The translations under genes were made by a program, and so were the position numbers. The notes beneath the pieces were generated by a model that searched no databases, was not told the DNA's origin, and saw nothing but the letters and a program-made list of their open reading frames with translations. This document shows, in pieces, positions 31,746-45,189 of a stretch of DNA of 64,000 bases. Position 1 is the stretch's first letter, and each line of letters begins with the position of its first letter. Source of the stretch: Perna viridis (taxonomy: Eukaryota); the NCBI GenBank assembly GCA_037379345.1, contig CM074519.1, forward strand, positions 31,336,103-31,400,102, in the 5' to 3' direction.

Positions 31746-34700
31746 CTGGAAGAGAATCATTTATTGATATGTTATTCAGTGGAACAAACATTCTCTAGGT
31801 CTGTGAAAAATGTACATGAACATTTTACTACGAGATCCAAACCCTGACCTATTAAGATTAATTCTGTAAAGTATACTACAAAATATAAACGTCTTTTGAA
31901 CATAGAGGATATTTAATGTTTCAATTCTATATTACTATTTTGGTTAATAAAAAGAGAGAAGTTTGCCCTATCCAAGATACCTTTTCAACACATCCAGAAA
32001 AGCCAATTTTTTTCAAGATTTTTTGTGTGCGCAAAATGCAGCCTTTGTTGTTTTTTACATTCTTAACATAGTCATAGATGTAAAGAAAATTTTGACTAAA
32101 AGAATATATATATTCTTTTTTGAAACATAATACTCTCAATATCATAAAAATGGTTCACGTCTAATTATCTGTATTTAATTTTACACTTGACCATACATGA
32201 AGATGCAATTAGATATATATTTGGATTGGTTTTTCATTGACTGATACGAGAAGCAATTTGATTTTATTTGATAGTTGATATTTATGGTTGTCCAAAAATA
32301 CCCCTAGTTTACCAAGTTACACAGACTTTAAGAATTTTACATTCAAAAACTAGATCTTATCATTTTTATTTAACTAAAATATCATTGAAATAGCAGTCTT
32401 TATTAAAATAAAAAAAAATTCTTTTTTGAAACATAATACTCTCAATATCATAAAAATGGTTCACATCTAATTATCTGTATTTAATTTTACACTTGACCAT
32501 ACATGAAGATGCAATTAGATATATATTTGGATTGGTTTTTCATTGACTGATACGAGAAGCAATTTGATTTTATTTGATAGTTGATATTTATGGTTGTCCA
32601 AAAATACCCCTAGTTTACCAAGTTACACAGACTTTAAGAATTTTACATTCAAAAACTAGATCTTATCATTTTTATTCAACTAAAATATCATTAAAATAGC
32701 AGTCTTTATTCAAATCAGACAATGTGATTCATGCATGTCAAAAACCCACCAATTTCAGTTTTATTTCTTCTTCATTTTGTCTTATTTGGTGATTTTAGAT
32801 ATATGATTTATCGACCTAACTTTACAACAAACATGATGATTTTTCATTCAAAATTGTCAACTTTCCTTTCATCTGTGGCAACATCCCTTCAGCACCTGTG
32901 TATGGAGTGTTCATATCACAACTAATACCTTATGCCAGAGCTTGCCGAAACTACGCAGAGTTCTATCGTGCTAGAACTCTAACAAGTAGGCTTCTGGAAC
33001 AGGGTTATGTTGCTACAAGATTGAAGTCATCACTACAGAAGTTTTATGGTCGTCACCATGAACTCGTGGATGGTTATAGTGTATCTATCTGCACCATGAG
33101 AACTGATTTATTCAACGGGTCATAGTTTTCCTTTCCACGCTTGTCTACCCCGGACTTGACTTTTTATGAACAACTCAGTGGGTGAATAGAAAAGGACGCT
33201 TACCCTACCAGTGCACCTGGTCCATGCTCCCAGTTTTTAGTGGAGTCTGAGTTGCTCATTTGATTTTGTTACTTTGTATGTATGATTTTAGTTACTTTAT
33301 GTTCTTTGTTGTGTATGTCTGTTTTCCATGTCTGGTCTTTGTCCCTGGATTACATTCGTTTGATTACTGCTGTAATCTTGGTTCCCTTGATTACTCTTTC
33401 TCAAAAATGCAGATCTGAATACAGAAATCATTACCATTCCATAAAAAAATATTGCATTTGTAGATTTAAAAAGCATTGCTCGTTCGGTGGGTTTTTATAC
33501 TCCATGAATCACTCTACCATTGGCAGTGTCTGAATTTTATATGGACTGGTACTTAATGAAAGTTTTCTTGACTGGTACCTTTAGTAATTGTTGCATTAGG
33601 TTATCTGTAATAACATATCCACAATCTTTTAAACTGAGCATCTTCAGGTTAGGACATGACCTCCAAATAAGTTTGATTGTTCCTTCAGTAACATACACTC
33701 CATCTAGGTTAAGGTGTTCTAATACTGGTATAAGAAGCTGTCGAAGGGTGCCATTGTTCAATTTCTTCTGCCTCTTCAATCTGTGAATCATTTTACTGAA
33801 AACAATTAAATATTTGTAACTTTGACAGCATTATTTTTATATGTCCTAATTTATGTATCTTGTTATATTGCTGCCCATCCCTCTTCATCCAAATACTATA
33901 TTACTACTGTATACTTTTGACAGACTTTATTGATTTTTTTATCCACCATTTGACATCATAAAAGTAATCTCACTTTGGTTTTAATAAATTTGGTTTTGTG
34001 TGCCTTAAAATTGGCTATAAATTCATTGATTACCTACATGTAAGTAGCAGTCTTTATAAAAATAAGACAGGAGGTAATTCATGTATGTAAATAACCCACT
34101 GATTTCAGTTGTATTTCTAATCCAGGAACAGTTACAGACCACATAACCAAGTCTTGGTTCATCAGTCTGTAACAGACCACATAAACAGTCTTGGTTCGTC
34201 AGTCTGTTACAGACCATATAACCAGTCTTGGTTTGTCATTCTGTTACAGAATACATGACCAGTCTTGGTTTGTCAGTCAGTTACAGATCACATAACCAGT
34301 CTTAGTTTGTCAATCGGTTACAGACCACATAACCAGTCTTAGTTTGTCAGTCAGTTACAGATCACATAACCAGTCATAGTTTGTCATTCTGTTACAGATC
34401 ACATGACCAGTCTTGGTATGTCATTCTGTTACAGACCACATGACCAGTCTTGGTTTGTCAGTCAGTTACAGATCACATGACCAGTATTGGTTTGTCAATC
34501 AGTTACAGATCACGTAACCAGTCTTGGTTTGTCAGTCAGTCACAGACCACATGACCAGTCTTGGTTTGTCAATCAGTTACAGATCACGTAAACAGTCTTA
34601 GTTTGTCATTCGGTTACAGACCACATAACCAGTCTTGGTTTGTCAGTCAGTTACAGATTACATAACCAGTCATAGTTTGTCATTCTGTTACAGATCACAT

Positions 34701-37972: not shown

Positions 37973-39748
37973 GCTGATTATAGAAAGTTTTCAATAGCTT
38001 TGGTTAATTGTTTAAAAAAAATGTTTTATAGAAGCGCCTACCGTTGTACAAATGTCACGGGATTTCTTAGTGTTGTGAAATGAACTATGTTGACTAAGAG
38101 AAAAGAGTACCGGATGACGAAACAAATTGTAAAAACTTGACAATTGTAGTTCAGACGCTAATTTATCCCGCTGGTATATTTGACAAAACAACTTTTACCT
38201 TTAGTTTTTAAGGCCTGAACAGCTGATTCTGTCAGCAACAACAAATGCTGTGGTAAACAGGATGTATTATTCTGATAGCAACATTTTACGATGTCGGTTT
38301 AAAATCCGGAATATATATCATGGTTCCAAATCAAATATCAAAATATCAAATAAGCTTAATCTAAAGTCGGCAAGTTATGTAAAAAATGAAAAAGTAATTA
38401 GTCAATTTGTAATACAGGTACGGTAATACTCATTTTCTATATCAGGTTAAAAAAACCTTTTGAAAAGTAGTAGAAATTGACATTATTTTGTGCATGATCA
38501 AAATTTGATTATAGCGAATATCATTAATCTAAAATTCATGCTAAATAAAATGAAGTATGTTTCAATGTTATGAATTATGAGTTCAATTACTCTCAAAAAT
38601 AATACATTTCTGTTTCAGGAATTGAATAGAATTGTCTGTAAGGAACAAGTTTCGGTATATGACAAAGACACCCCCCCCCCAAAAAAATACTACATTTATA
38701 GAATAAACTCCCCAAAACTGCCAGAAATTAGGAAACTTTTTCCGACGCAGTCGAAATAGTTTCGCTGTTCACCCTTTGACCTTAAAGACGCTCTTCCATG
38801 GAAACGCAAGTCACCTGATCGAAATTCTGTTTCCAGATTGGCCAAATACTGATAACTTAGTGGTGTTCGAAAAAGGAAATTGAAATTGCGTGCATTGCGT
38901 TATTTCCTGATGAAAATTATAAGTAAAAAGAATACATTTTACTACGTCGGCTATCTTTTTTTAAAAGATATTGCTTGTTTTAAAATTTTAACCAGGTTTT
39001 CGTATATAATACATATTGTTTTCTCCATATATTATGGTTAATATGGTGATGAATATCAAATTAATCATGCTCAGATGTCTTAACAATCAGTTAATGTTAT
39101 ATCCTTCAACAATTAATGGTGTTATGAAGATTAGCCTGATCTAATTTTTTAAGTTATAAACACAGTTTGCAAATCTAGTACACAAACAAAATACCAAACA
39201 ATCTTCAACTTCCGTCCAAAACATAATTTATAACCTCCTCCCCCTAAACAAAATAATAAAATAATAAAAATATGAAGGACAGGTACCCTATAAAATCTCC
39301 TTATTGTTTTCCCACCCTAAATATTTATTGATGTTTCCCAACTCCAAAGAATTAAAAAAAATCAAATATTTGAAGAAGAAAAAAATAATATAGTCCTAGC
39401 CTATGTGTTGCAAAATGTTTTAGTACCCCGGAAATCAAGTGTATAATATGTCTGCGATCGAGTTCATGTTTTGATATGGATTTGAGGATTTGTTTGATTT
39501 TGCCGTCCATTCAAATTTTTACCAATGACATGAATGTGCTAGTTTGCATGGAACTTAATAAAATTGAGAACCGGGAAAATTTAACTTGAGGTTTTGAGGA
39601 AAATCTTAATTTGAGATTTTTTTTTATAATTTAGATACCTATTCATAGCATGTCTTACGCGTAGAATGATACCTCCTTTTAACCCCATGTTTACCAACGT
39701 GCCTATGTTTGGGTACTTTTGAAAATTATATCAAATGTCAATGATTCT

Positions 39749-39993
39749 TCAAACTTTATTAACAAAGAAATCGGCATGACCCTTTGCTGCAGAAACAGGA
39801 CATTCTATTTCTACGCCATTCTGTTCTTCCCAGGTTGTGGCATTCAAGTACGACAGACGTACAGACGTTGTATTACTGGGTTGGATTTGCCCGACGAACA
39901 TCTGTCGATAATAATATGGTGCAGTTGGGACAGGATAATACAATGTCATCGCTGTGGAGAATGTCAAGGAACCGTTGGTCTCTATTTTATAAT
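39749..39993 (-). CDS. VirK-like gene exon 5 (terminal)
   Basis: DYKIETNGSLTFSTAMTLYYPVPTAPYYYRQMFVGQIQPSNTT...IECPVSAAKGHADFFVNKV*. Confidence 0.82.
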
Positions 39994-42585
39994 CTGTTAA
40001 AAAAAAACATTTAAGCTAGCAATGTAAGATATATATGTGATTAAGAAGAAGTAAAGCAGTATTCAACACTAATTATGAAAACGAAATGAATTATAGAATG
40101 AGTCCCAGATATTCAGATGATTTCATAGCTTGCTGGTGGTTTTTATCCCAGTGGCGGCTCCAGGAGGGGGTACAGGAGGTTGACATCCCTGCTTTTTATT
40201 AAAAAGTTTGTCATTTTCATGTGTAAAATTGACAAATAATGGTATATAATGTCCTACTACCCTCCTCATTTTCTGTGGAATCCCTGCTGGCACCCCTCGT
40301 TTTCAAAGTGTTTGGATCCCCTCGTGCAACCAAAAGTATATGGTGATTGAACTACACAGTTTACCTTTTTAGAATGCCACACACCTGCACAATATAATTA
40401 TATCTCCTGAATATGTTAAGATATAATTTAAATGTCGACTTATTTTTTTTCACGACGCTAATCGCTAATAGTATACGGTTACCTTGAAGTTTGCCCCCGA
40501 CAAAACCTTGTCCACAGTTTTCACCAGGCGGACATGCACAGCCTTTCATATTGATCACAAATCGAACAGGCTCACCATCAACAATTGTCTTCCGCACGGC
40601 AGCGTATGAACTTAGTTTACTAGACGAAGAAGTGTCGCTGGCTCTAAATGAACTGTTGAAAGAGAACAGGAACCATTTAAGGCACACCGTCGGAAACCCA
40701 TGAGTACAGTTGACTTCGCTCCGAGCAGTTCTCCGTCATGTGGAAAATGGATTCTAATCTAATTCGAATTTCGTCTCATCCTTCAACCATCCTCTCCTTT
40801 ATTTAGAACCAAACCAGTTTCTATATGAAAAGAGGAGGATTGCTGGGTCAGATGAAATTCGGAGTCAACCGTGGCTTTACGAAGATGTTATTAGCAAGGC
40901 ATGTTTGAGTTTGAGTTGTTTGCAAAGAAGCCAGATTGATCATACAAAATCATCACAGTGGTGTTTACAATGAATATAGAAGCAATCTCTTCATTCAATT
41001 TGACCTAAAAAGCGAAGAAAAATGTAGACTTCATAAAAATAATTGGACTTAGATTTTATGATGTTCGAAAATTTAGAGAGAAGTACATTTCGATGATTTA
41101 GATTGCGATGTGAGTAAATGCATTGTTAAAGCTTTGTAGTTTAATAAACTGTACGGAACTTAAGTCTTACATATCACTGTTTCCAGAATCCCAGGTACAA
41201 ATAACCATCTTGATGCCGTTTGAGTTGTTTGCAAAGAAGCCAGATTGATCATACAAAATCATCACAGTGGTGTTTACAATGAATATAGAAGCAATTTCTT
41301 CATTCAACTGACCTGAAATACATATAAATTGTTTTCTCCTATTTGAGCAATTACATTTTGTGAATGTTTGGTGAAATACTTGTTTCCATCTTGTTTTAAA
41401 CTAATATAAATTGATATTACCAACATAATCCAGCAATGGCCATGTTTTACTATGAAGAGCATTTACTGACAGACCCAGAAGGTGCGCTGACTGGTCAAAG
41501 AATGAACTCATTTCAGTGATTTATTAGTCATTTTCTATACAATTAACTATAGCATTCCAACACTTTCCCTATATTTTTCTTTGCTTCGTACGTGGTTGCA
41601 CGTTATGTACCTACTTTCTCCATGACAGTGCTTGCTAGATTGCCTGTAGTACCTTTTAAATCCTAAGGCAGATATGTCATGCACTTCAGGACGAGAACGA
41701 TCGACTGACCAATCGACGGTGCGTCGAACAGACCCCCTTCCAATCGGACCCACTGCGCCGGATTCTTAAACAAAGCAATAGTAGCATGTCACTTGACTCG
41801 GACACATAAGTTATGTAAAAATTTGAATTCATAAAAAATATAGAAGATATATTTAACAAGGTGCACCGGAGTACGGTTCGAGGGACGCGGATCGCATATA
41901 CTAACTACATACCTTTAGTATCTCGCCCGGCGACGTATTTATCGTTGTTAAACACAAGGCTCTCCGTTTGGGAATTAGCATTCGTAGTAAGAAAGAAGTT
42001 GATTTCTCCGCCGAATACTGGTAGGTTTGTAGCCTTTTGGTTTGAAATCGGTTGGCAAGACGACGTATTGAAGAAGTAGGTAACACGGGCGCCATTTGTT
42101 AGGTGTTCCACTAGAGTATGATAGCTGTCTATCGGCGCTGAACTATTAAAAAGATAAATATACTGCGTAGTGAGAGTTACAATGAAAGGTAGAGTTATAC
42201 CAATCTTGGGCACTAGAGGGGCATGTGAATTCATTATAATGTGTACGGCGAATTCATAAAATACATTTTTTCTGTTTGGTGATAACAATTACTACAGTTA
42301 GGGAAAGTTGTAAAGACTAAACTGTCATATACGGTAAAAATAACAGCTCTACCTCCATCAACATCTGCATGGAGCGCAGAGTAGTGTACTGAAAAGTAAA
42401 CATAGAAGTCCTCTCAGGAGTTATTCACACATCGGATGAGGGCATTGAAATCTTACATGCACTCACCCACCCTTGCGCCCCTCAAATGTTCATGGTCTAC
42501 ATGGGAAAGATACTAACGCTATCACAGAATGAACATAAGTCTGTATAAACAAAGGAAAAACACAAGAACCTAATTGTCTGTACAT
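39749..42585 (-). CDS. Probably secreted protein with two tandem VirK-like domains; 5 exons, 855 nt, 284 aa
   Basis: Exons: 42585-42518, 42142-41913, 41312-41171, 40652-40483, 39993-39749; GT-AG introns with phases 2, 1, 2, 1 join into one open frame. Repeat 1: IDSYHTLVEHLTNGARVTYFFNTSSC...FGGEINFF...LVF...VIC..ISF. Repeat 2: LSSYAAVRKTIVDGEPVRFVINMKGC...VGGKLQDYKIETNGSLTFS...QIQPSNTT..L....IECPV....DFF. Both fit the recalled VirK (PF06903) pattern. Exon 1 is signal-peptide-like and is the least certain exon. Confidence 0.8.
40483..40652 (-). CDS. VirK-like gene exon 4
   Basis: SFRASDTSSSSKLSSYAAVRKTIVDGEPVRFVINMKGCACPPGENCGQGFVGGKLQ. Confidence 0.82.
40764..40862. repeat. Imperfect hairpin / mini-MITE in VirK-like intron 3
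   Basis: gaatttcgtct...atcctctcctt..tagaa / ttcta..aagaggaggat...agatgaaattc. Confidence 0.55.
40910..41006 (-). pseudogene. Partial duplicate (pseudo-exon) of VirK-like exon 3 within intron 3
   Basis: Near-identical to 41219-41314. It has its own ttttag acceptor but carries a +1 insertion (GTCAAATTG vs GTCAGTTG) and lacks the 3' part and donor. Confidence 0.75.
41171..41312 (-). CDS. VirK-like gene exon 3
   Basis: GQLNEEIASIFIVNTTVMILYDQSGFFANNSNGIKMVICTWDSGNSD; tttcag acceptor, gtaaga donor. Confidence 0.8.
41913..42142 (-). CDS. VirK-like gene exon 2
   Basis: SAPIDSYHTLVEHLTNGARVTYFFNTSSCQP...DKYVAGRDTK; ttaatag acceptor, gtatgt donor. Confidence 0.82.
42518..42585 (-). CDS. VirK-like gene exon 1 (putative signal peptide MYRQLGSCVFPLFIQTYVHSVIA)
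   Basis: ATG at 42585; GC|gttagt donor gives the phase 2 required by exon 2. Confidence 0.55.
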
Positions 42586-43119
42586 AGTAGTTCTTATCTA
42601 TGATCTGAAGTGTTAGAAAGGAGGACACGTTGGATGGTAAAACACAGATTTGTTCCCTAACATTTGATGTGAAGACAATTCTAACGGGAAGTATTTCATT
42701 TGAGGACTTCATTTTTACAACTTGAGTTAAGAGCGATGCAACTGATGATCGCCTCCAAAATTAAAAAAAAAAAATGAAGAGAACCTATAATTGTTTTTAG
42801 TTGACTAGAATGATCCTTGTAAAGACTAACACAAGAAACAAAACAATAAATATTGTTTGACCAAAAAAGGGTGGTAATAATTGGATAACACCACCTAGCT
42901 CATTAAATTGAAACAAAGACATAGGCGGTTCAAGGGACACAACTCTTATGATCGGAAATATTGTTTGATTATATTTAAAAACACTGATGCCACTCCCACC
43001 CTTTCGGGAATTTCTGGAGGCATGCGATCCAAACATCTACTCTTGATGTAGATCTATGACCGGACGGATATACAAGAAAGAAGAAACAAATGAAATGATG
43101 TATAATTATCAAATTAAAT

Positions 43120-43168
43120 AAAAACAAACAAACAAAACAAAACAAAACAAAACAAAACAAACCAAACT
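43120..43168. repeat. (AAAAC)n microsatellite
   Basis: Read directly from the sequence. Confidence 0.85.
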
Positions 43169-45189
43169 AGATAGGCTTAAAAAAAAAACCCATACACAAA
43201 CAAGTATATTTACAAAAAATTGACATAAAGCTACAGTAAACTACCGAGTTGAAGAACTATTCGATCTTCCCTAAGAAAAGAAAGGGAAAAAGTTTGTTTT
43301 TCGAAGGCAAAAAATCAAAAAAACAGAAATAAAAAGAAAAAAGAAGAAAAAAGAAGAAAAAAACAATCGGTCGTATAATGGTATCGATGTTTGAGTTAGA
43401 AATCAAGTAAATTAACAACTGATAGCTATAGGTTGAAAACAAATTGATTAAAAATACTGATTAAAATTTAACATATTTATATATTATAGGCGTACGAAAT
43501 TGGACAGCGCCTTAAAAAATCATTTTAAAAAATTTTTGGTCCGATTTTGATTTTTTTTTTGTTGGATTCATTATAAAAATCTCTGACTGCATTATTCTAT
43601 CAGAGCTCTATTATCTATTAATTTACGTTTATCGAGTTATAAGAGACCAGAGGACATCACCCCAAAAATCGACCTTTAGTTTATTTTTGATCACATTTTG
43701 AGATTCCTTATGAAAATTCCATGCTTGTGTTTTTCTATCAGATTTCAGATATCGCTTGCGGTTTTCGATTTACATTGGGTTAAAGGGGCCACACCCCAAA
43801 AAATCGACTTTTAACATTTTTGATCCAATTTTGATTTTTTTATTGAACTAATTTTGAAAGTCCTTGCCAACAGATTTACATCTCTAAGATTTTTTAGTTA
43901 TAGGGATCGAATGCAAAGTTCTTCAAGCATCCTTAAAGCAAAACTGTTTTCACTTTTAATTGCATTTTCAATGTTGTGCGTTATTGAGTCAAAAACGCTT
44001 GTTGTGTCCATAATGAGCCATAAATCCATACGCTCAAGTGTGTCAAAACTAATATTGTGTCCACGCTAGTACTTGTCCCAAGTGAACAAAATTCAACATA
44101 TATGCAGCAGTCGTATCATACTGCGTCGTATTATTTTTTGTGTGCATTTTTTGATTTCTTGGTTCAGCAGTAAATTTGAGTTCATTTTAGAGTCATTGAT
44201 ATTCTTGATCAACATATCAGAGTTACTGCTCCTGATTATATGACATTATTAGAAGGATATCCCGGGTAAAACTATTTACTATATTTCCTTCTGCTAGGCA
44301 AAGAAAATTCTTTCAAAAAGCATTTGATAAAACGGCCGCGTGGATTTAAAGTAATTAATTATAAATTCTTATAACATCAAATTTTATTCTATATATGCTA
44401 TAATTTAATTATTATACACTTTGTTTGCACATCTGTCTATTGGTGTTGTGGGATAATTTTGAAATAAATTCAAGATATCTTGACAGCATTCTGTTTGAGC
44501 AAATGCCACTATTGTGTAATTGTGTACATGCTTGCCCTAAGTAAAAAGAAATCAACATGTTGCGGTTGTATCATGCTGCACTCTACGATGCTCTTTATTA
44601 GTACGGATATCGCCTTATGACATCGGAAAGAATAGAACTTTGCTTAAAAGGTGGCATTGTATTACATGTGATAATAGAGCTGTATTTGTTCAATGGACTA
44701 AGAAGTGCATGGTTCGTGCATGTCTTCTTCATCATACCTAATTATATAATAATATTCTAAGATTTCGGTGTTTATGTTGATGTACGAGTTTTTGGAACTA
44801 GCTGCACAGAAACATTTATAAGCGCCTATATCGAAGAAAATATACATGATGTCGGATAGTTTTGGCAAGCACACCAACAACGAACCTAAATATTACGCAA
44901 AGCTGTCAGAATTCTACGATGCCGTCTAAATTTTTGTGTGATATTTAAAACGGTCTTTCGTAATCAGAATGGCGAATTTCAATAAATCAATTCTACAAAT
45001 TAAAAAAAAAGCTTGTATTGAGATACGTTTGAAGTTGATCCCGGTCATGTCCTTTTATTTCATTCCTATTTTTGCAAATTGACGAATTTGATAATCATTG
45101 AATCGATATAAATTGATTCAGTAAGTGGTTACTTTGATCAAGGAATTTAATATTTTAACTTTTATCACTTCGTCATTTTTGAAATGTCC

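What the first reader, a model, noticed from the sequence alone, without database searches (positions are those of the whole stretch)
39749..42585. Intron-containing animal gene made of two bacterial VirK-like domains: a candidate domesticated horizontal transfer
Seen in sequence: five exons with matching phases give a 284-aa protein. It has a signal-peptide-like start and two internally similar domains of about 125 aa (..[IL].SY..[LV]...[LI]..G..V.[YF]..N...C....GG.[IL]..[FY]......L.F ... C ..... F). Established knowledge: VirK (PF06903) is a small exported two-Cys protein of unknown function in plant- and amoeba-associated proteobacteria such as Agrobacterium, Xanthomonas and Legionella. It is not a standard metazoan family. 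The gene has four spliceosomal introns and six N-glycosylation sequons (NTS, NTT, NNS, NGS, NTT, NAT), and it sits among ordinary animal genes, which argues against contamination. Inference: an old bacterium-to-animal transfer (or an unrecognised ancient family), tandemly doubled and adapted for secretion, perhaps for mucosal, digestive or microbe-interaction roles.
Basis: partly seen in the sequence, partly recalled or inferred. Interest (0 to 1): 0.85.

Follow-up and report, generated by a model that had tools for sequence, protein, structure and literature searches.

The report
Mussel gene with two VirK domains
A mussel chromosome carries a real, spliced, expressed gene for a probably secreted protein made of two copies of VirK, a small secreted-protein domain otherwise found only in bacteria; mussels and oysters share it with identical introns, so a very old bacterium-to-bivalve gene transfer is the best explanation.

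Summary

Both halves have the VirK fold.
- Models of oyster orthologues match the Legionella VirK crystal structure 5XTA at Z 13.3 for the C-terminal domain and Z 9.4 for the N-terminal domain. Nothing else in the PDB scores above 5.3.
- Orthologues pass Pfam's VirK cut-off.
- The window's own exons match a bacteria-only VirK profile in the right order.

The family turned up only in mussels and oysters; all other relatives are bacterial. Exon lengths and intron phases are the same in this mussel, Mytilus trossulus and Ostrea edulis. The gene therefore predates the mussel-oyster split and is not contamination.

A bacterial origin followed by domain doubling is the best reading. It rests on distribution, because my tree does not place the bivalve clade inside any bacterial group. 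Function is unknown for VirK everywhere, and I found no paper on bivalve VirK genes.

The parts
42518..42599 (-). Exon 1: a 5' UTR of at least 14 nt, then ATG at 42585. It encodes 22 codons plus 2 nt (phase 2) that form a signal-peptide-like N-terminus.
   Evidence: Contig ends and the 42142|42518 joint appear in X1-X3. Hydrophobic core score.
42143..42517 (-). Intron 1 (GT..AG)
   Evidence: Joint in 3 runs
41913..42142 (-). Exon 2 (230 nt): the N-terminal two thirds of VirK-like domain 1, with sequon NTS and the first Cys.
   Evidence: Matches positions 3-64 of a bacteria-only VirK HMM at 16.4 bits.
41313..41912 (-). Intron 2 (GT..AG, phase 1)
   Evidence: Joint in 3 runs
41171..41312 (-). 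Exon 3 (142 nt): the C-terminal part of domain 1, with sequons NTT and NNS and the second Cys.
40653..41170 (-). Intron 3 (GT..AG, phase 2), which sits at the boundary between the two domains.
   Evidence: Joint in 3 runs
40909..41010 (-). Dead partial copy of exon 3 with its acceptor, inside intron 3. A 1-nt insertion leads to an in-frame stop, and the copy is absent from transcripts.
   Evidence: Alignment, zero depth, profile hit
40483..40652 (-). Exon 4 (170 nt): the linker plus the N-terminal third of VirK domain 2, carrying the CxC...C cysteines.
   Evidence: Pfam VirK positions 2-29 at 13 bits. Bacterial HMM positions 2-43 at 14.2 bits.
39994..40482 (-). Intron 4 (GT..AG, phase 1). It contains a dispersed repeat at about 40187-40327.
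   Evidence: Joint in 3 runs, and very high depth with loose ends over the repeat
39742..39993 (-). Exon 5: the C-terminal two thirds of VirK domain 2 (sequons NGS, NTT, NAT; last Cys). Stop codon at 39749-39751, followed by a short 3' end.
   Evidence: Bacterial HMM positions 74-112. Alignment A4.

Best explanation
This is a genuine nuclear bivalve gene for a probably secreted, N-glycosylated, disulfide-bonded protein built from two tandem VirK-fold domains.

The most likely history has four steps. A single-domain secreted VirK gene entered an ancestor of mussels and oysters (Pteriomorphia) from a bacterium. It gained a eukaryotic signal peptide and four spliceosomal introns. Its domain then duplicated in tandem: D2 stayed close to the bacterial form and D1 diverged quickly. 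The gene later split into at least three paralogue groups.

Shown here: the gene model and splicing, expression in some samples, the VirK fold of both domains, the restricted distribution, and the shared intron structure.

Inferred: the direction of transfer, secretion, and glycosylation. The working mechanism is also inferred, at low confidence. I propose that it is a non-enzymatic extracellular binding protein that uses two VirK modules to bind a microbial or host-surface ligand at the animal-microbe interface. That would parallel bacterial VirK proteins, which are exported into host-facing secretomes.
For: Gene model: one search shows four canonical joints in contigs from three studies. No intron-free genomic copy exists.

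VirK identity, by sequence:
- Orthologues score 29-35 bits against Pfam's cut-off of 23.7.
- The family profile hits only 5XTA among PDB sequences, at E 0.0054.
- hhalign of D2 against a bacterial profile gives E 3.7e-8 over 111 columns.
- Window exons 2, 4 and 5 match a bacteria-only HMM in the correct order.

VirK identity, by structure:
- Foldseek gives E 3.8e-6 and TM 0.83.
- VIA gives Z 13.3 and rmsd 1.9 A for D2, and Z 9.4 for D1.
- An exhaustive PDB scan finds nothing else above Z 5.3.
- Alignment A4 lines up the first Cys of the window's CxC cluster (exon 4) and its exon-5 Cys with the two bacterial cysteines; the family keeps one invariant Cys pair in each domain.

Distribution:
- Only Mytilus, Ostrea, Crassostrea/Magallana and Saccostrea carry the family.
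- The nearest Atlas clusters are all bacterial.

Age:
- The five-exon structure, phases 2,1,2,1 and near-identical exon lengths recur in O. edulis and in two M. trossulus genes.
- Two paralogue groups contain both mussels and oysters.

Duplication:
- D1 against D2 gives E 1.6e-5.
- In the tree, D1 is a clade (100/99), bacteria fall on one side (99/92) and D2 lies between them. The same three paralogue groups recur in the D1 and D2 subtrees.

Export context in bacteria:
- Agrobacterium VirK has a signal peptide and 2 Cys.
- NttG is a type II secretion substrate (PMC6617341).
- Xanthomonas VirK is found in secretomes (PMC4768671).
Against: - The tree does not nest the bivalve sequences inside a bacterial clade, so neither the donor nor the direction is demonstrated. 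Its bacterial sample is mostly Rhizobiales.
- D2 was never searched exhaustively against all proteins. The single exhaustive search used exon 2, which belongs to D1.
- VirK was present in only 5 of 401 sampled Pseudomonadota genomes.
- The window's own full-length protein was not scored, because the exons were not joined. Exon 4 alone reaches only 13 bits in Pfam.
- No signal-peptide predictor was run.
- One raw RNA-seq run shows no reads on the exons.
- No VirK protein has a known biochemical activity, so the binding role is conjecture.
Confidence: 0.7

Rival explanations
1. VirK is an ancient family that was present in early eukaryotes or early animals, was inherited vertically, and was lost almost everywhere except in pteriomorph bivalves.
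For: The gene is old, with four conserved introns and several paralogue groups shared by mussels and oysters. The tree does not place the bivalves inside bacteria. Sensitivity for distant eukaryotic relatives of D2 was limited.
Against: No eukaryotic relative outside mussels and oysters appeared in a full scan of 1.84 billion representatives with D1, in two profile searches, or among the Atlas neighbours. This reading would need very many independent losses.
Confidence: 0.12
2. The gene reached bivalves indirectly, through a virus, a protist parasite or a symbiont, rather than directly from a free-living bacterium. Alternatively, mussels and oysters acquired it separately.
For: The donor is unresolved. 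Bivalves host many intracellular microbes. According to PMC6617341, the nearest non-Legionella relative of NttG is in Francisella halioticida. From my own knowledge, that species is a pathogen of molluscs. This is a lead only.
Against: Identical intron positions and phases, and the same two-domain architecture, in oyster and mussel genes argue for one acquisition before their split. Close-relative scans of viral contigs and metagenome contigs found no match, though these scans have low sensitivity.
Confidence: 0.1
3. The resemblance to VirK is convergent or a chance fold match, and the gene is a lineage-specific bivalve invention.
For: Identity to bacterial VirK is only about 15-18%. D1 against the bacterial profile is weak (hhalign E 0.0022, probability 13%).
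Against: Independent sequence evidence is significant: Pfam above its curated cut-off and hhalign E 3.7e-8. The match is co-linear over the whole domain, keeps the same Cys pair, and is a unique, full-length structural match at Z 13.3 to a fold that has no other PDB neighbour.
Confidence: 0.03
4. The finding is an artefact: bacterial contamination, a mis-assembly, or an untranscribed pseudogene.
For: None found.
Against: The window lies 31 Mb into a chromosome-scale contig. The gene has four spliceosomal introns that are removed in transcripts from three studies. Its frame is open, and orthologues lie on chromosomes of other bivalves.
Confidence: 0.01

Closest known systems
NttG / Lpg1832 of Legionella pneumophila (PDB 5XTA), a VirK-family type II secretion substrate
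   Same: Both domains share its fold over its whole 120 residues: D2 at Z 13.3, rmsd 1.9 A, 116 residues; D1 at Z 9.4, 112 residues. The profile also matches it by sequence. Like the bivalve protein, it is exported and has no known activity (PMC6617341).
   Different: It is a bacterial single-domain protein of about 120 mature residues, secreted through the type II system. It has no introns and no N-glycosylation. Identity is 11-18%.
VirK of Agrobacterium Ti plasmids, rhizobia and Xanthomonas (Pfam PF06903)
   Same: The alignment is co-linear and includes the L-x-[ST]-[FY] start, the GG motif, the G-x-[LI]-x-F strand, the Cys pair and the C-terminal FF. Orthologues pass Pfam's cut-off. These proteins carry a signal peptide and occur in secretomes.
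   Different: They are single-domain proteins of about 145 aa, often plasmid-borne and next to vir genes. The bivalve protein has two domains. D2 has an extra local Cys pair, and the family has conserved sequons.
Other domesticated bacterium-to-animal transfers of secreted-protein genes, for example those catalogued in the metazoan HGT compendium (PMC13342648)
   Same: The signature is the same: a bacterial-type family, chromosomal integration, gained introns and a signal peptide, expression, and a taxonomically patchy distribution.
   Different: The compendium's main text mentions molluscs only as the phylum with the fewest transfers among its top seven. Its gene tables were not available to me, so I could not check whether VirK is listed there.
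VirK of Shigella, Salmonella and enteroaggregative E. coli
   Same: Only the name is shared.
   Different: From my own knowledge this is an unrelated family (Pfam DUF535). PMC4768671 cites the E. coli VirK when discussing the Xanthomonas protein. It should not be used to infer function here.

Membership tests
VirK (Pfam PF06903) | Profile match at or above Pfam's gathering score of 23.7 bits | tested here: met
   Full-length orthologues P0003, P0013, P0014 and P0018 score 29.1-34.9 bits, always on D2. The databases also hold precomputed PF06903 hits for all named family members.
VirK (Pfam PF06903) | The same profile match for the window's own protein | tested here: inconclusive
   The exons were searched one at a time and the joined protein was deliberately not built. 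Exon 4 gives 13 bits (E 0.11) on profile positions 2-29. Against a bacteria-only HMM, exon 2 gives 16.4 bits, exon 4 gives 14.2 and exon 5 gives 7.4, in co-linear order. The window's exons are 50-58% identical to the O. edulis orthologue P0003, which passes the cut-off.
VirK (Pfam PF06903) | Fold of the solved family member Lpg1832 (5XTA) | tested here: met
   The AF2 model of P0027 (pLDDT 83) gives D2 Z 13.3, rmsd 1.9 A, 116 of 120 residues. The model of P0019 (pLDDT 70) gives D1 Z 9.4, rmsd 3.0 A, 112 residues. The next best hits score Z 5.3 and 3.4. These are models of orthologues, not of the window's protein.
VirK (Pfam PF06903) | Conserved pair of cysteines, one near the start and one near the end of the domain | tested here: met
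   The first Cys of the window's exon 4 and the Cys of exon 5 align with the two bacterial cysteines. D1 keeps one Cys in exon 2 and one in exon 3. These positions are invariant across the family.
VirK (Pfam PF06903) | N-terminal export signal | not testable with these tools
   No SignalP-type predictor was available. Exon 1 has a hydrophobic core (KD 2.16) comparable with eight homologues (2.3-3.2) and a small-residue -3/-1 motif.
VirK (Pfam PF06903) | Single-domain bacterial protein of about 145 aa | tested here: not met
   The protein is eukaryotic, has two domains and 284 aa, and its gene is split by introns. It is therefore a divergent eukaryotic branch of the family rather than a typical member.
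Bacterium-to-animal horizontal gene transfer | The gene is integrated in the host chromosome, carries host-type introns and is transcribed | tested here: met
Bacterium-to-animal horizontal gene transfer | The family is absent from other eukaryotes and present in several bacterial groups | tested here: met
   Only mussels and oysters carry it. Bacterial carriers include Alpha-, Beta- and Gammaproteobacteria, and Bacteroidota among the Atlas clusters. The limit is that no exhaustive search was run with D2.
Bacterium-to-animal horizontal gene transfer | The recipient clade nests inside donor diversity in a phylogeny | tested here: inconclusive
   In the 45-row tree the bacteria form one side of a branch (99/92) and the bivalves do not nest among them. 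The bacterial sample is mostly Rhizobiales.

The most novel reading that the evidence does not exclude
An ancestor of mussels and oysters captured a secreted bacterial host-interaction protein, doubled it, and has kept it for hundreds of millions of years as a secreted decoy or recognition factor. In this reading it binds the same host or microbial ligand that bacterial VirK proteins target. That would make bivalves the first system in which the long-unknown function of the VirK fold could be read out.
Probability: 0.12. Interest if true: 0.8.

Novelty: new variant of a known kind. Interest (0 to 1): 0.58.

Why it matters
VirK proteins occur in plant pathogens, rhizobia and Legionella, are exported during host contact, and have a fold of their own, yet no activity is known for any of them. 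This is a eukaryotic branch of the family that has been kept intact, duplicated and expressed in two commercially important bivalve orders since before they diverged. That retention shows the fold does something useful outside a bacterial cell. It also offers a new experimental route to the function, through ligand screens and knock-downs in oyster or mussel. The gene adds a well-documented case, with conserved introns, to the short list of ancient bacterial genes domesticated by molluscs. Current databases label these proteins only as 'uncharacterized', and I found no paper that discusses them.

Tried and rejected
- BLASTP between the window's own exons found no internal repeat. Only profiles show it.
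- Pfam on single exons gave at best 13 bits.
- PF06903 searched exon-wise in the window's own genome gave only one sub-threshold, unrelated hit on C15.
- The search for related loci with alignment A1 failed because no stretch was conserved enough.
- Close-relative scans with exon 5 found nothing in metagenome contigs or viral contigs.
- There is no detectable synteny between the window and the 10-kb flanks of the O. edulis and M. trossulus genes.
- An exhaustive structural scan found no functional analogue. Everything other than VirK scored Z 5.3 or less, so lipid-binding or lysozyme-inhibitor analogies were dropped.
- Literature searches for VirK in bivalves or in HGT surveys returned only author-name matches. 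The supplements of the metazoan HGT compendium were not held.
- P0045, a 257-aa 'protein' in the same cluster as the exon-2 ORF, is a read-through of intron sequence by a prokaryotic gene caller and not an isoform.
- The alternative in-frame ATG inside intron 1 (42231) was rejected because transcripts splice from 42518 to 42142.
Full report

I therefore never joined the window's exons, either in a tool or in a script. Every full-length test (Pfam at gathering threshold, AlphaFold, fold searches, trees) was run on database orthologues. The window's exons were analysed as separate rows. In one search a script mapped three database proteins back onto their own loci and printed coordinates only.

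**1. The observation**

The region holds a minus-strand gene.
- Laying Logan contigs of three runs from three different studies on window 39200-43400 gave one intron-free contig per run (866-878 nt). Each contig has the same four joints, all CT..AC on the plus strand, which is GT..AG on the gene's strand.
- The exons are 42518-42599 (ATG at 42585), 41913-42142, 41171-41312, 40483-40652 and 39742-39993 (stop at 39749-39751).
- The coding lengths 68+230+142+170+242 give 852 nt, or 284 aa, with intron phases 2,1,2,1.
- My own first guess for the exon-2 acceptor (42162) was wrong. The transcripts use 42142.
- The window's genome has no intron-free copy, so the contigs are transcripts.
- A raw RNA-seq run of the same species had no reads on the exons in the 19% of the run that was read. 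Expression therefore depends on sample.
- The six sequons and the six mature-chain cysteines are as described.

**2. What the protein is**

Sequence evidence:
- Single exons are too short for Pfam. Only exon 4 gave a weak VirK hit: 13 bits on profile positions 2-29.
- An exhaustive phmmer scan of 1.84 billion representatives with exon 2 found 23 proteins.
- All those that carry a source name come from Mytilus or oysters: Ostrea, Crassostrea/Magallana and Saccostrea, each labelled 'uncharacterized protein'.
- The rest are unnamed short exon-like fragments, plus unrelated bacterial repeat proteins in the tail of the list (FG-GAP, YadA and DUF6348 hits).
- The full-length relatives pass Pfam's VirK gathering score: 29.1-34.9 bits against a cut-off of 23.7, always on the C-terminal domain.
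- The window's four exon peptides align co-linearly with these proteins.
- A profile of the family hits exactly one PDB sequence, 5XTA 'VirK protein', across its whole length (E 0.0054).

Structure evidence:
- An AlphaFold model of the Crassostrea virginica orthologue (pLDDT 83, pTM 0.82) has two halves with the same order of secondary-structure elements.
- Foldseek finds only 5XTA (E 3.8e-6, TM 0.83).
- VIA-align places 5XTA on residues 155-279 with Z 13.3 and rmsd 1.9 A over 116 of 120 residues. The next hit scores Z 5.3.
- A scan of 48,161 PDB representatives that does not depend on Foldseek confirms that nothing else resembles this fold.
- To test the first domain I modelled an Ostrea isoform that has D1 and only the start of D2 (pLDDT 70). 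Its residues 22-150 match 5XTA over the full length with Z 9.4, and the next hit scores 3.4.

Tests against bacterial profiles:
- hhalign of the family's D1 against its D2 gives E 1.6e-5.
- Against a profile built only from 19 bacterial VirK sequences, D2 gives E 3.7e-8 over 111 columns and D1 gives a weak E 0.0022.
- The window's own exons hit that bacterial HMM in the correct order: exon 2 on positions 3-64, exon 4 on positions 2-43, exon 5 on positions 74-112.
- The bacterial Cys pair is kept in both domains. D2 adds a local CxC...C pair.
- Three sequons are invariant or nearly so across the family.

Both halves are therefore VirK domains, and D1 is the more diverged copy.

**3. Distribution and age**

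- Two further profile searches of 5.8 billion clusters returned only mussel and oyster two-domain proteins or bacterial single-domain VirK proteins.
- The nearest ESM-Atlas clusters are all bacterial, whether compared by features or by structure.
- In bacteria the family is sparse: 5 of 401 sampled Pseudomonadota genomes carry it. It is nevertheless spread over Alpha-, Beta- and Gammaproteobacteria, often on plasmids.
- Mapping database proteins onto their loci shows the same five-exon structure in other bivalves. Ostrea edulis has exons of 140/230/139/170/248 nt. Two tandem Mytilus trossulus genes have 62/230-233/139/167/245 nt. All have phases 2,1,2,1, and the window has 68/230/142/170/245.
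- The gene, with all four introns, therefore predates the mussel-oyster split. From general knowledge, that split is early Palaeozoic.
- The window's genome has one further, more divergent paralogue on contig C15. It is closest to the oyster group represented by P0013 and P0014.
- The window lies 31 Mb into a chromosome-scale contig, next to an LRR-containing animal gene (scan note s1-763030).
- In M. trossulus the upstream neighbour is a GCFC/NTR2-domain gene.
- Contamination is excluded.

**4. History**

- The tree used 13 D1, 13 D2 and 19 bacterial domains, with 127 columns kept.
- It makes D1 a clade (100/99), puts all bacteria on one side of a branch (99/92), and leaves D2 between them.
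- The same three bivalve paralogue groups recur inside the D1 and D2 parts.
- This fits one founding two-domain gene whose D2 kept the bacterial character.
- It does not nest the bivalves within bacteria, and the bacterial sample is mostly Rhizobiales. The donor and, strictly, the direction of transfer remain inferred from distribution.
- The intron inside D1 and the intron inside D2 are not at equivalent positions in the D1-D2 alignment. I read this directly. It suggests that these introns were gained after the duplication.

**5. Function**

- No VirK protein has a known activity.
- NttG is a type II secretion substrate of undetermined role (PMC6617341).
- Xanthomonas VirK appears in infection-mimicking secretomes (PMC4768671).
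- Agrobacterium VirK sits beside the vir regulon genes and carries a signal peptide.
- The structure offers no analogy.
- My committed but low-confidence reading is a non-enzymatic, secreted, glycosylated two-module binding protein that acts at the interface between animal and microbe.

**6. Novelty**

- Databases already attach PF06903 to these 'uncharacterized' proteins automatically.
- I found no paper that mentions VirK genes in bivalves or lists them as transfers.
- I rate this a new eukaryotic, tandem, intron-bearing variant of a known bacterial family, and a well-supported new example of a known phenomenon.
- Another first-stage note on this genome flags a different bacterial-type secreted gene (s1-759823).

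Noticed in passing
window 40909-41010 (minus strand, inside intron 3): A 102-nt near-identical copy of the start of exon 3, including its acceptor AG. It has a 1-nt insertion that brings a stop into frame, no matching 3' part, and no coverage in transcripts. It is a dead partial exon duplication.
   Followed up: yes
window 40187-40327 (intron 4): A short element with very high summed contig depth (hundreds to thousands) and loose ends on both sides in every run laid. It is probably a dispersed, transcribed repeat (SINE- or MITE-like) and not part of this gene's mRNA.
   Followed up: no
G000:C15:9767314-9768704 (L039, L041, L044, L045): A second, more divergent VirK-like gene in the same genome, closest to the oyster paralogue group of P0013 and P0014. 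Only the parts resembling exon 2 and exon 4 were detected, so I cannot say whether it is intact.
   Followed up: partly
L043:10001-15824 and 16219-20050 (Mytilus trossulus): Two tandem two-domain VirK genes with identical exon structure, so the family expands locally in Mytilus. M. californianus gene numbers also suggest a cluster.
   Followed up: partly
window 32826-33116, versus L042:2023-2337 and L042:23465-23848: A translated stretch inside the neighbouring LRR/Tpt1-type gene region is 38-53% identical to two ORFs that flank the Ostrea edulis VirK gene. It may be a shared transposable element or a conserved domain, and it is not evidence of synteny.
   Followed up: no
literature (PMC6617341): The paper names Francisella halioticida as carrying the only non-Legionella homologue of NttG. 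From my own knowledge that bacterium is a pathogen of abalone, scallops and mussels, so mollusc-associated Gammaproteobacteria are a lead for the donor lineage.
   Followed up: no
window 39246 and 42757-42774: Raw RNA-seq reads with poly(A)-like loose ends sit at A-rich tracts just outside the gene on both sides. They probably come from internal priming or from neighbouring transcripts, not from this gene, which had no reads in that run.
   Followed up: no
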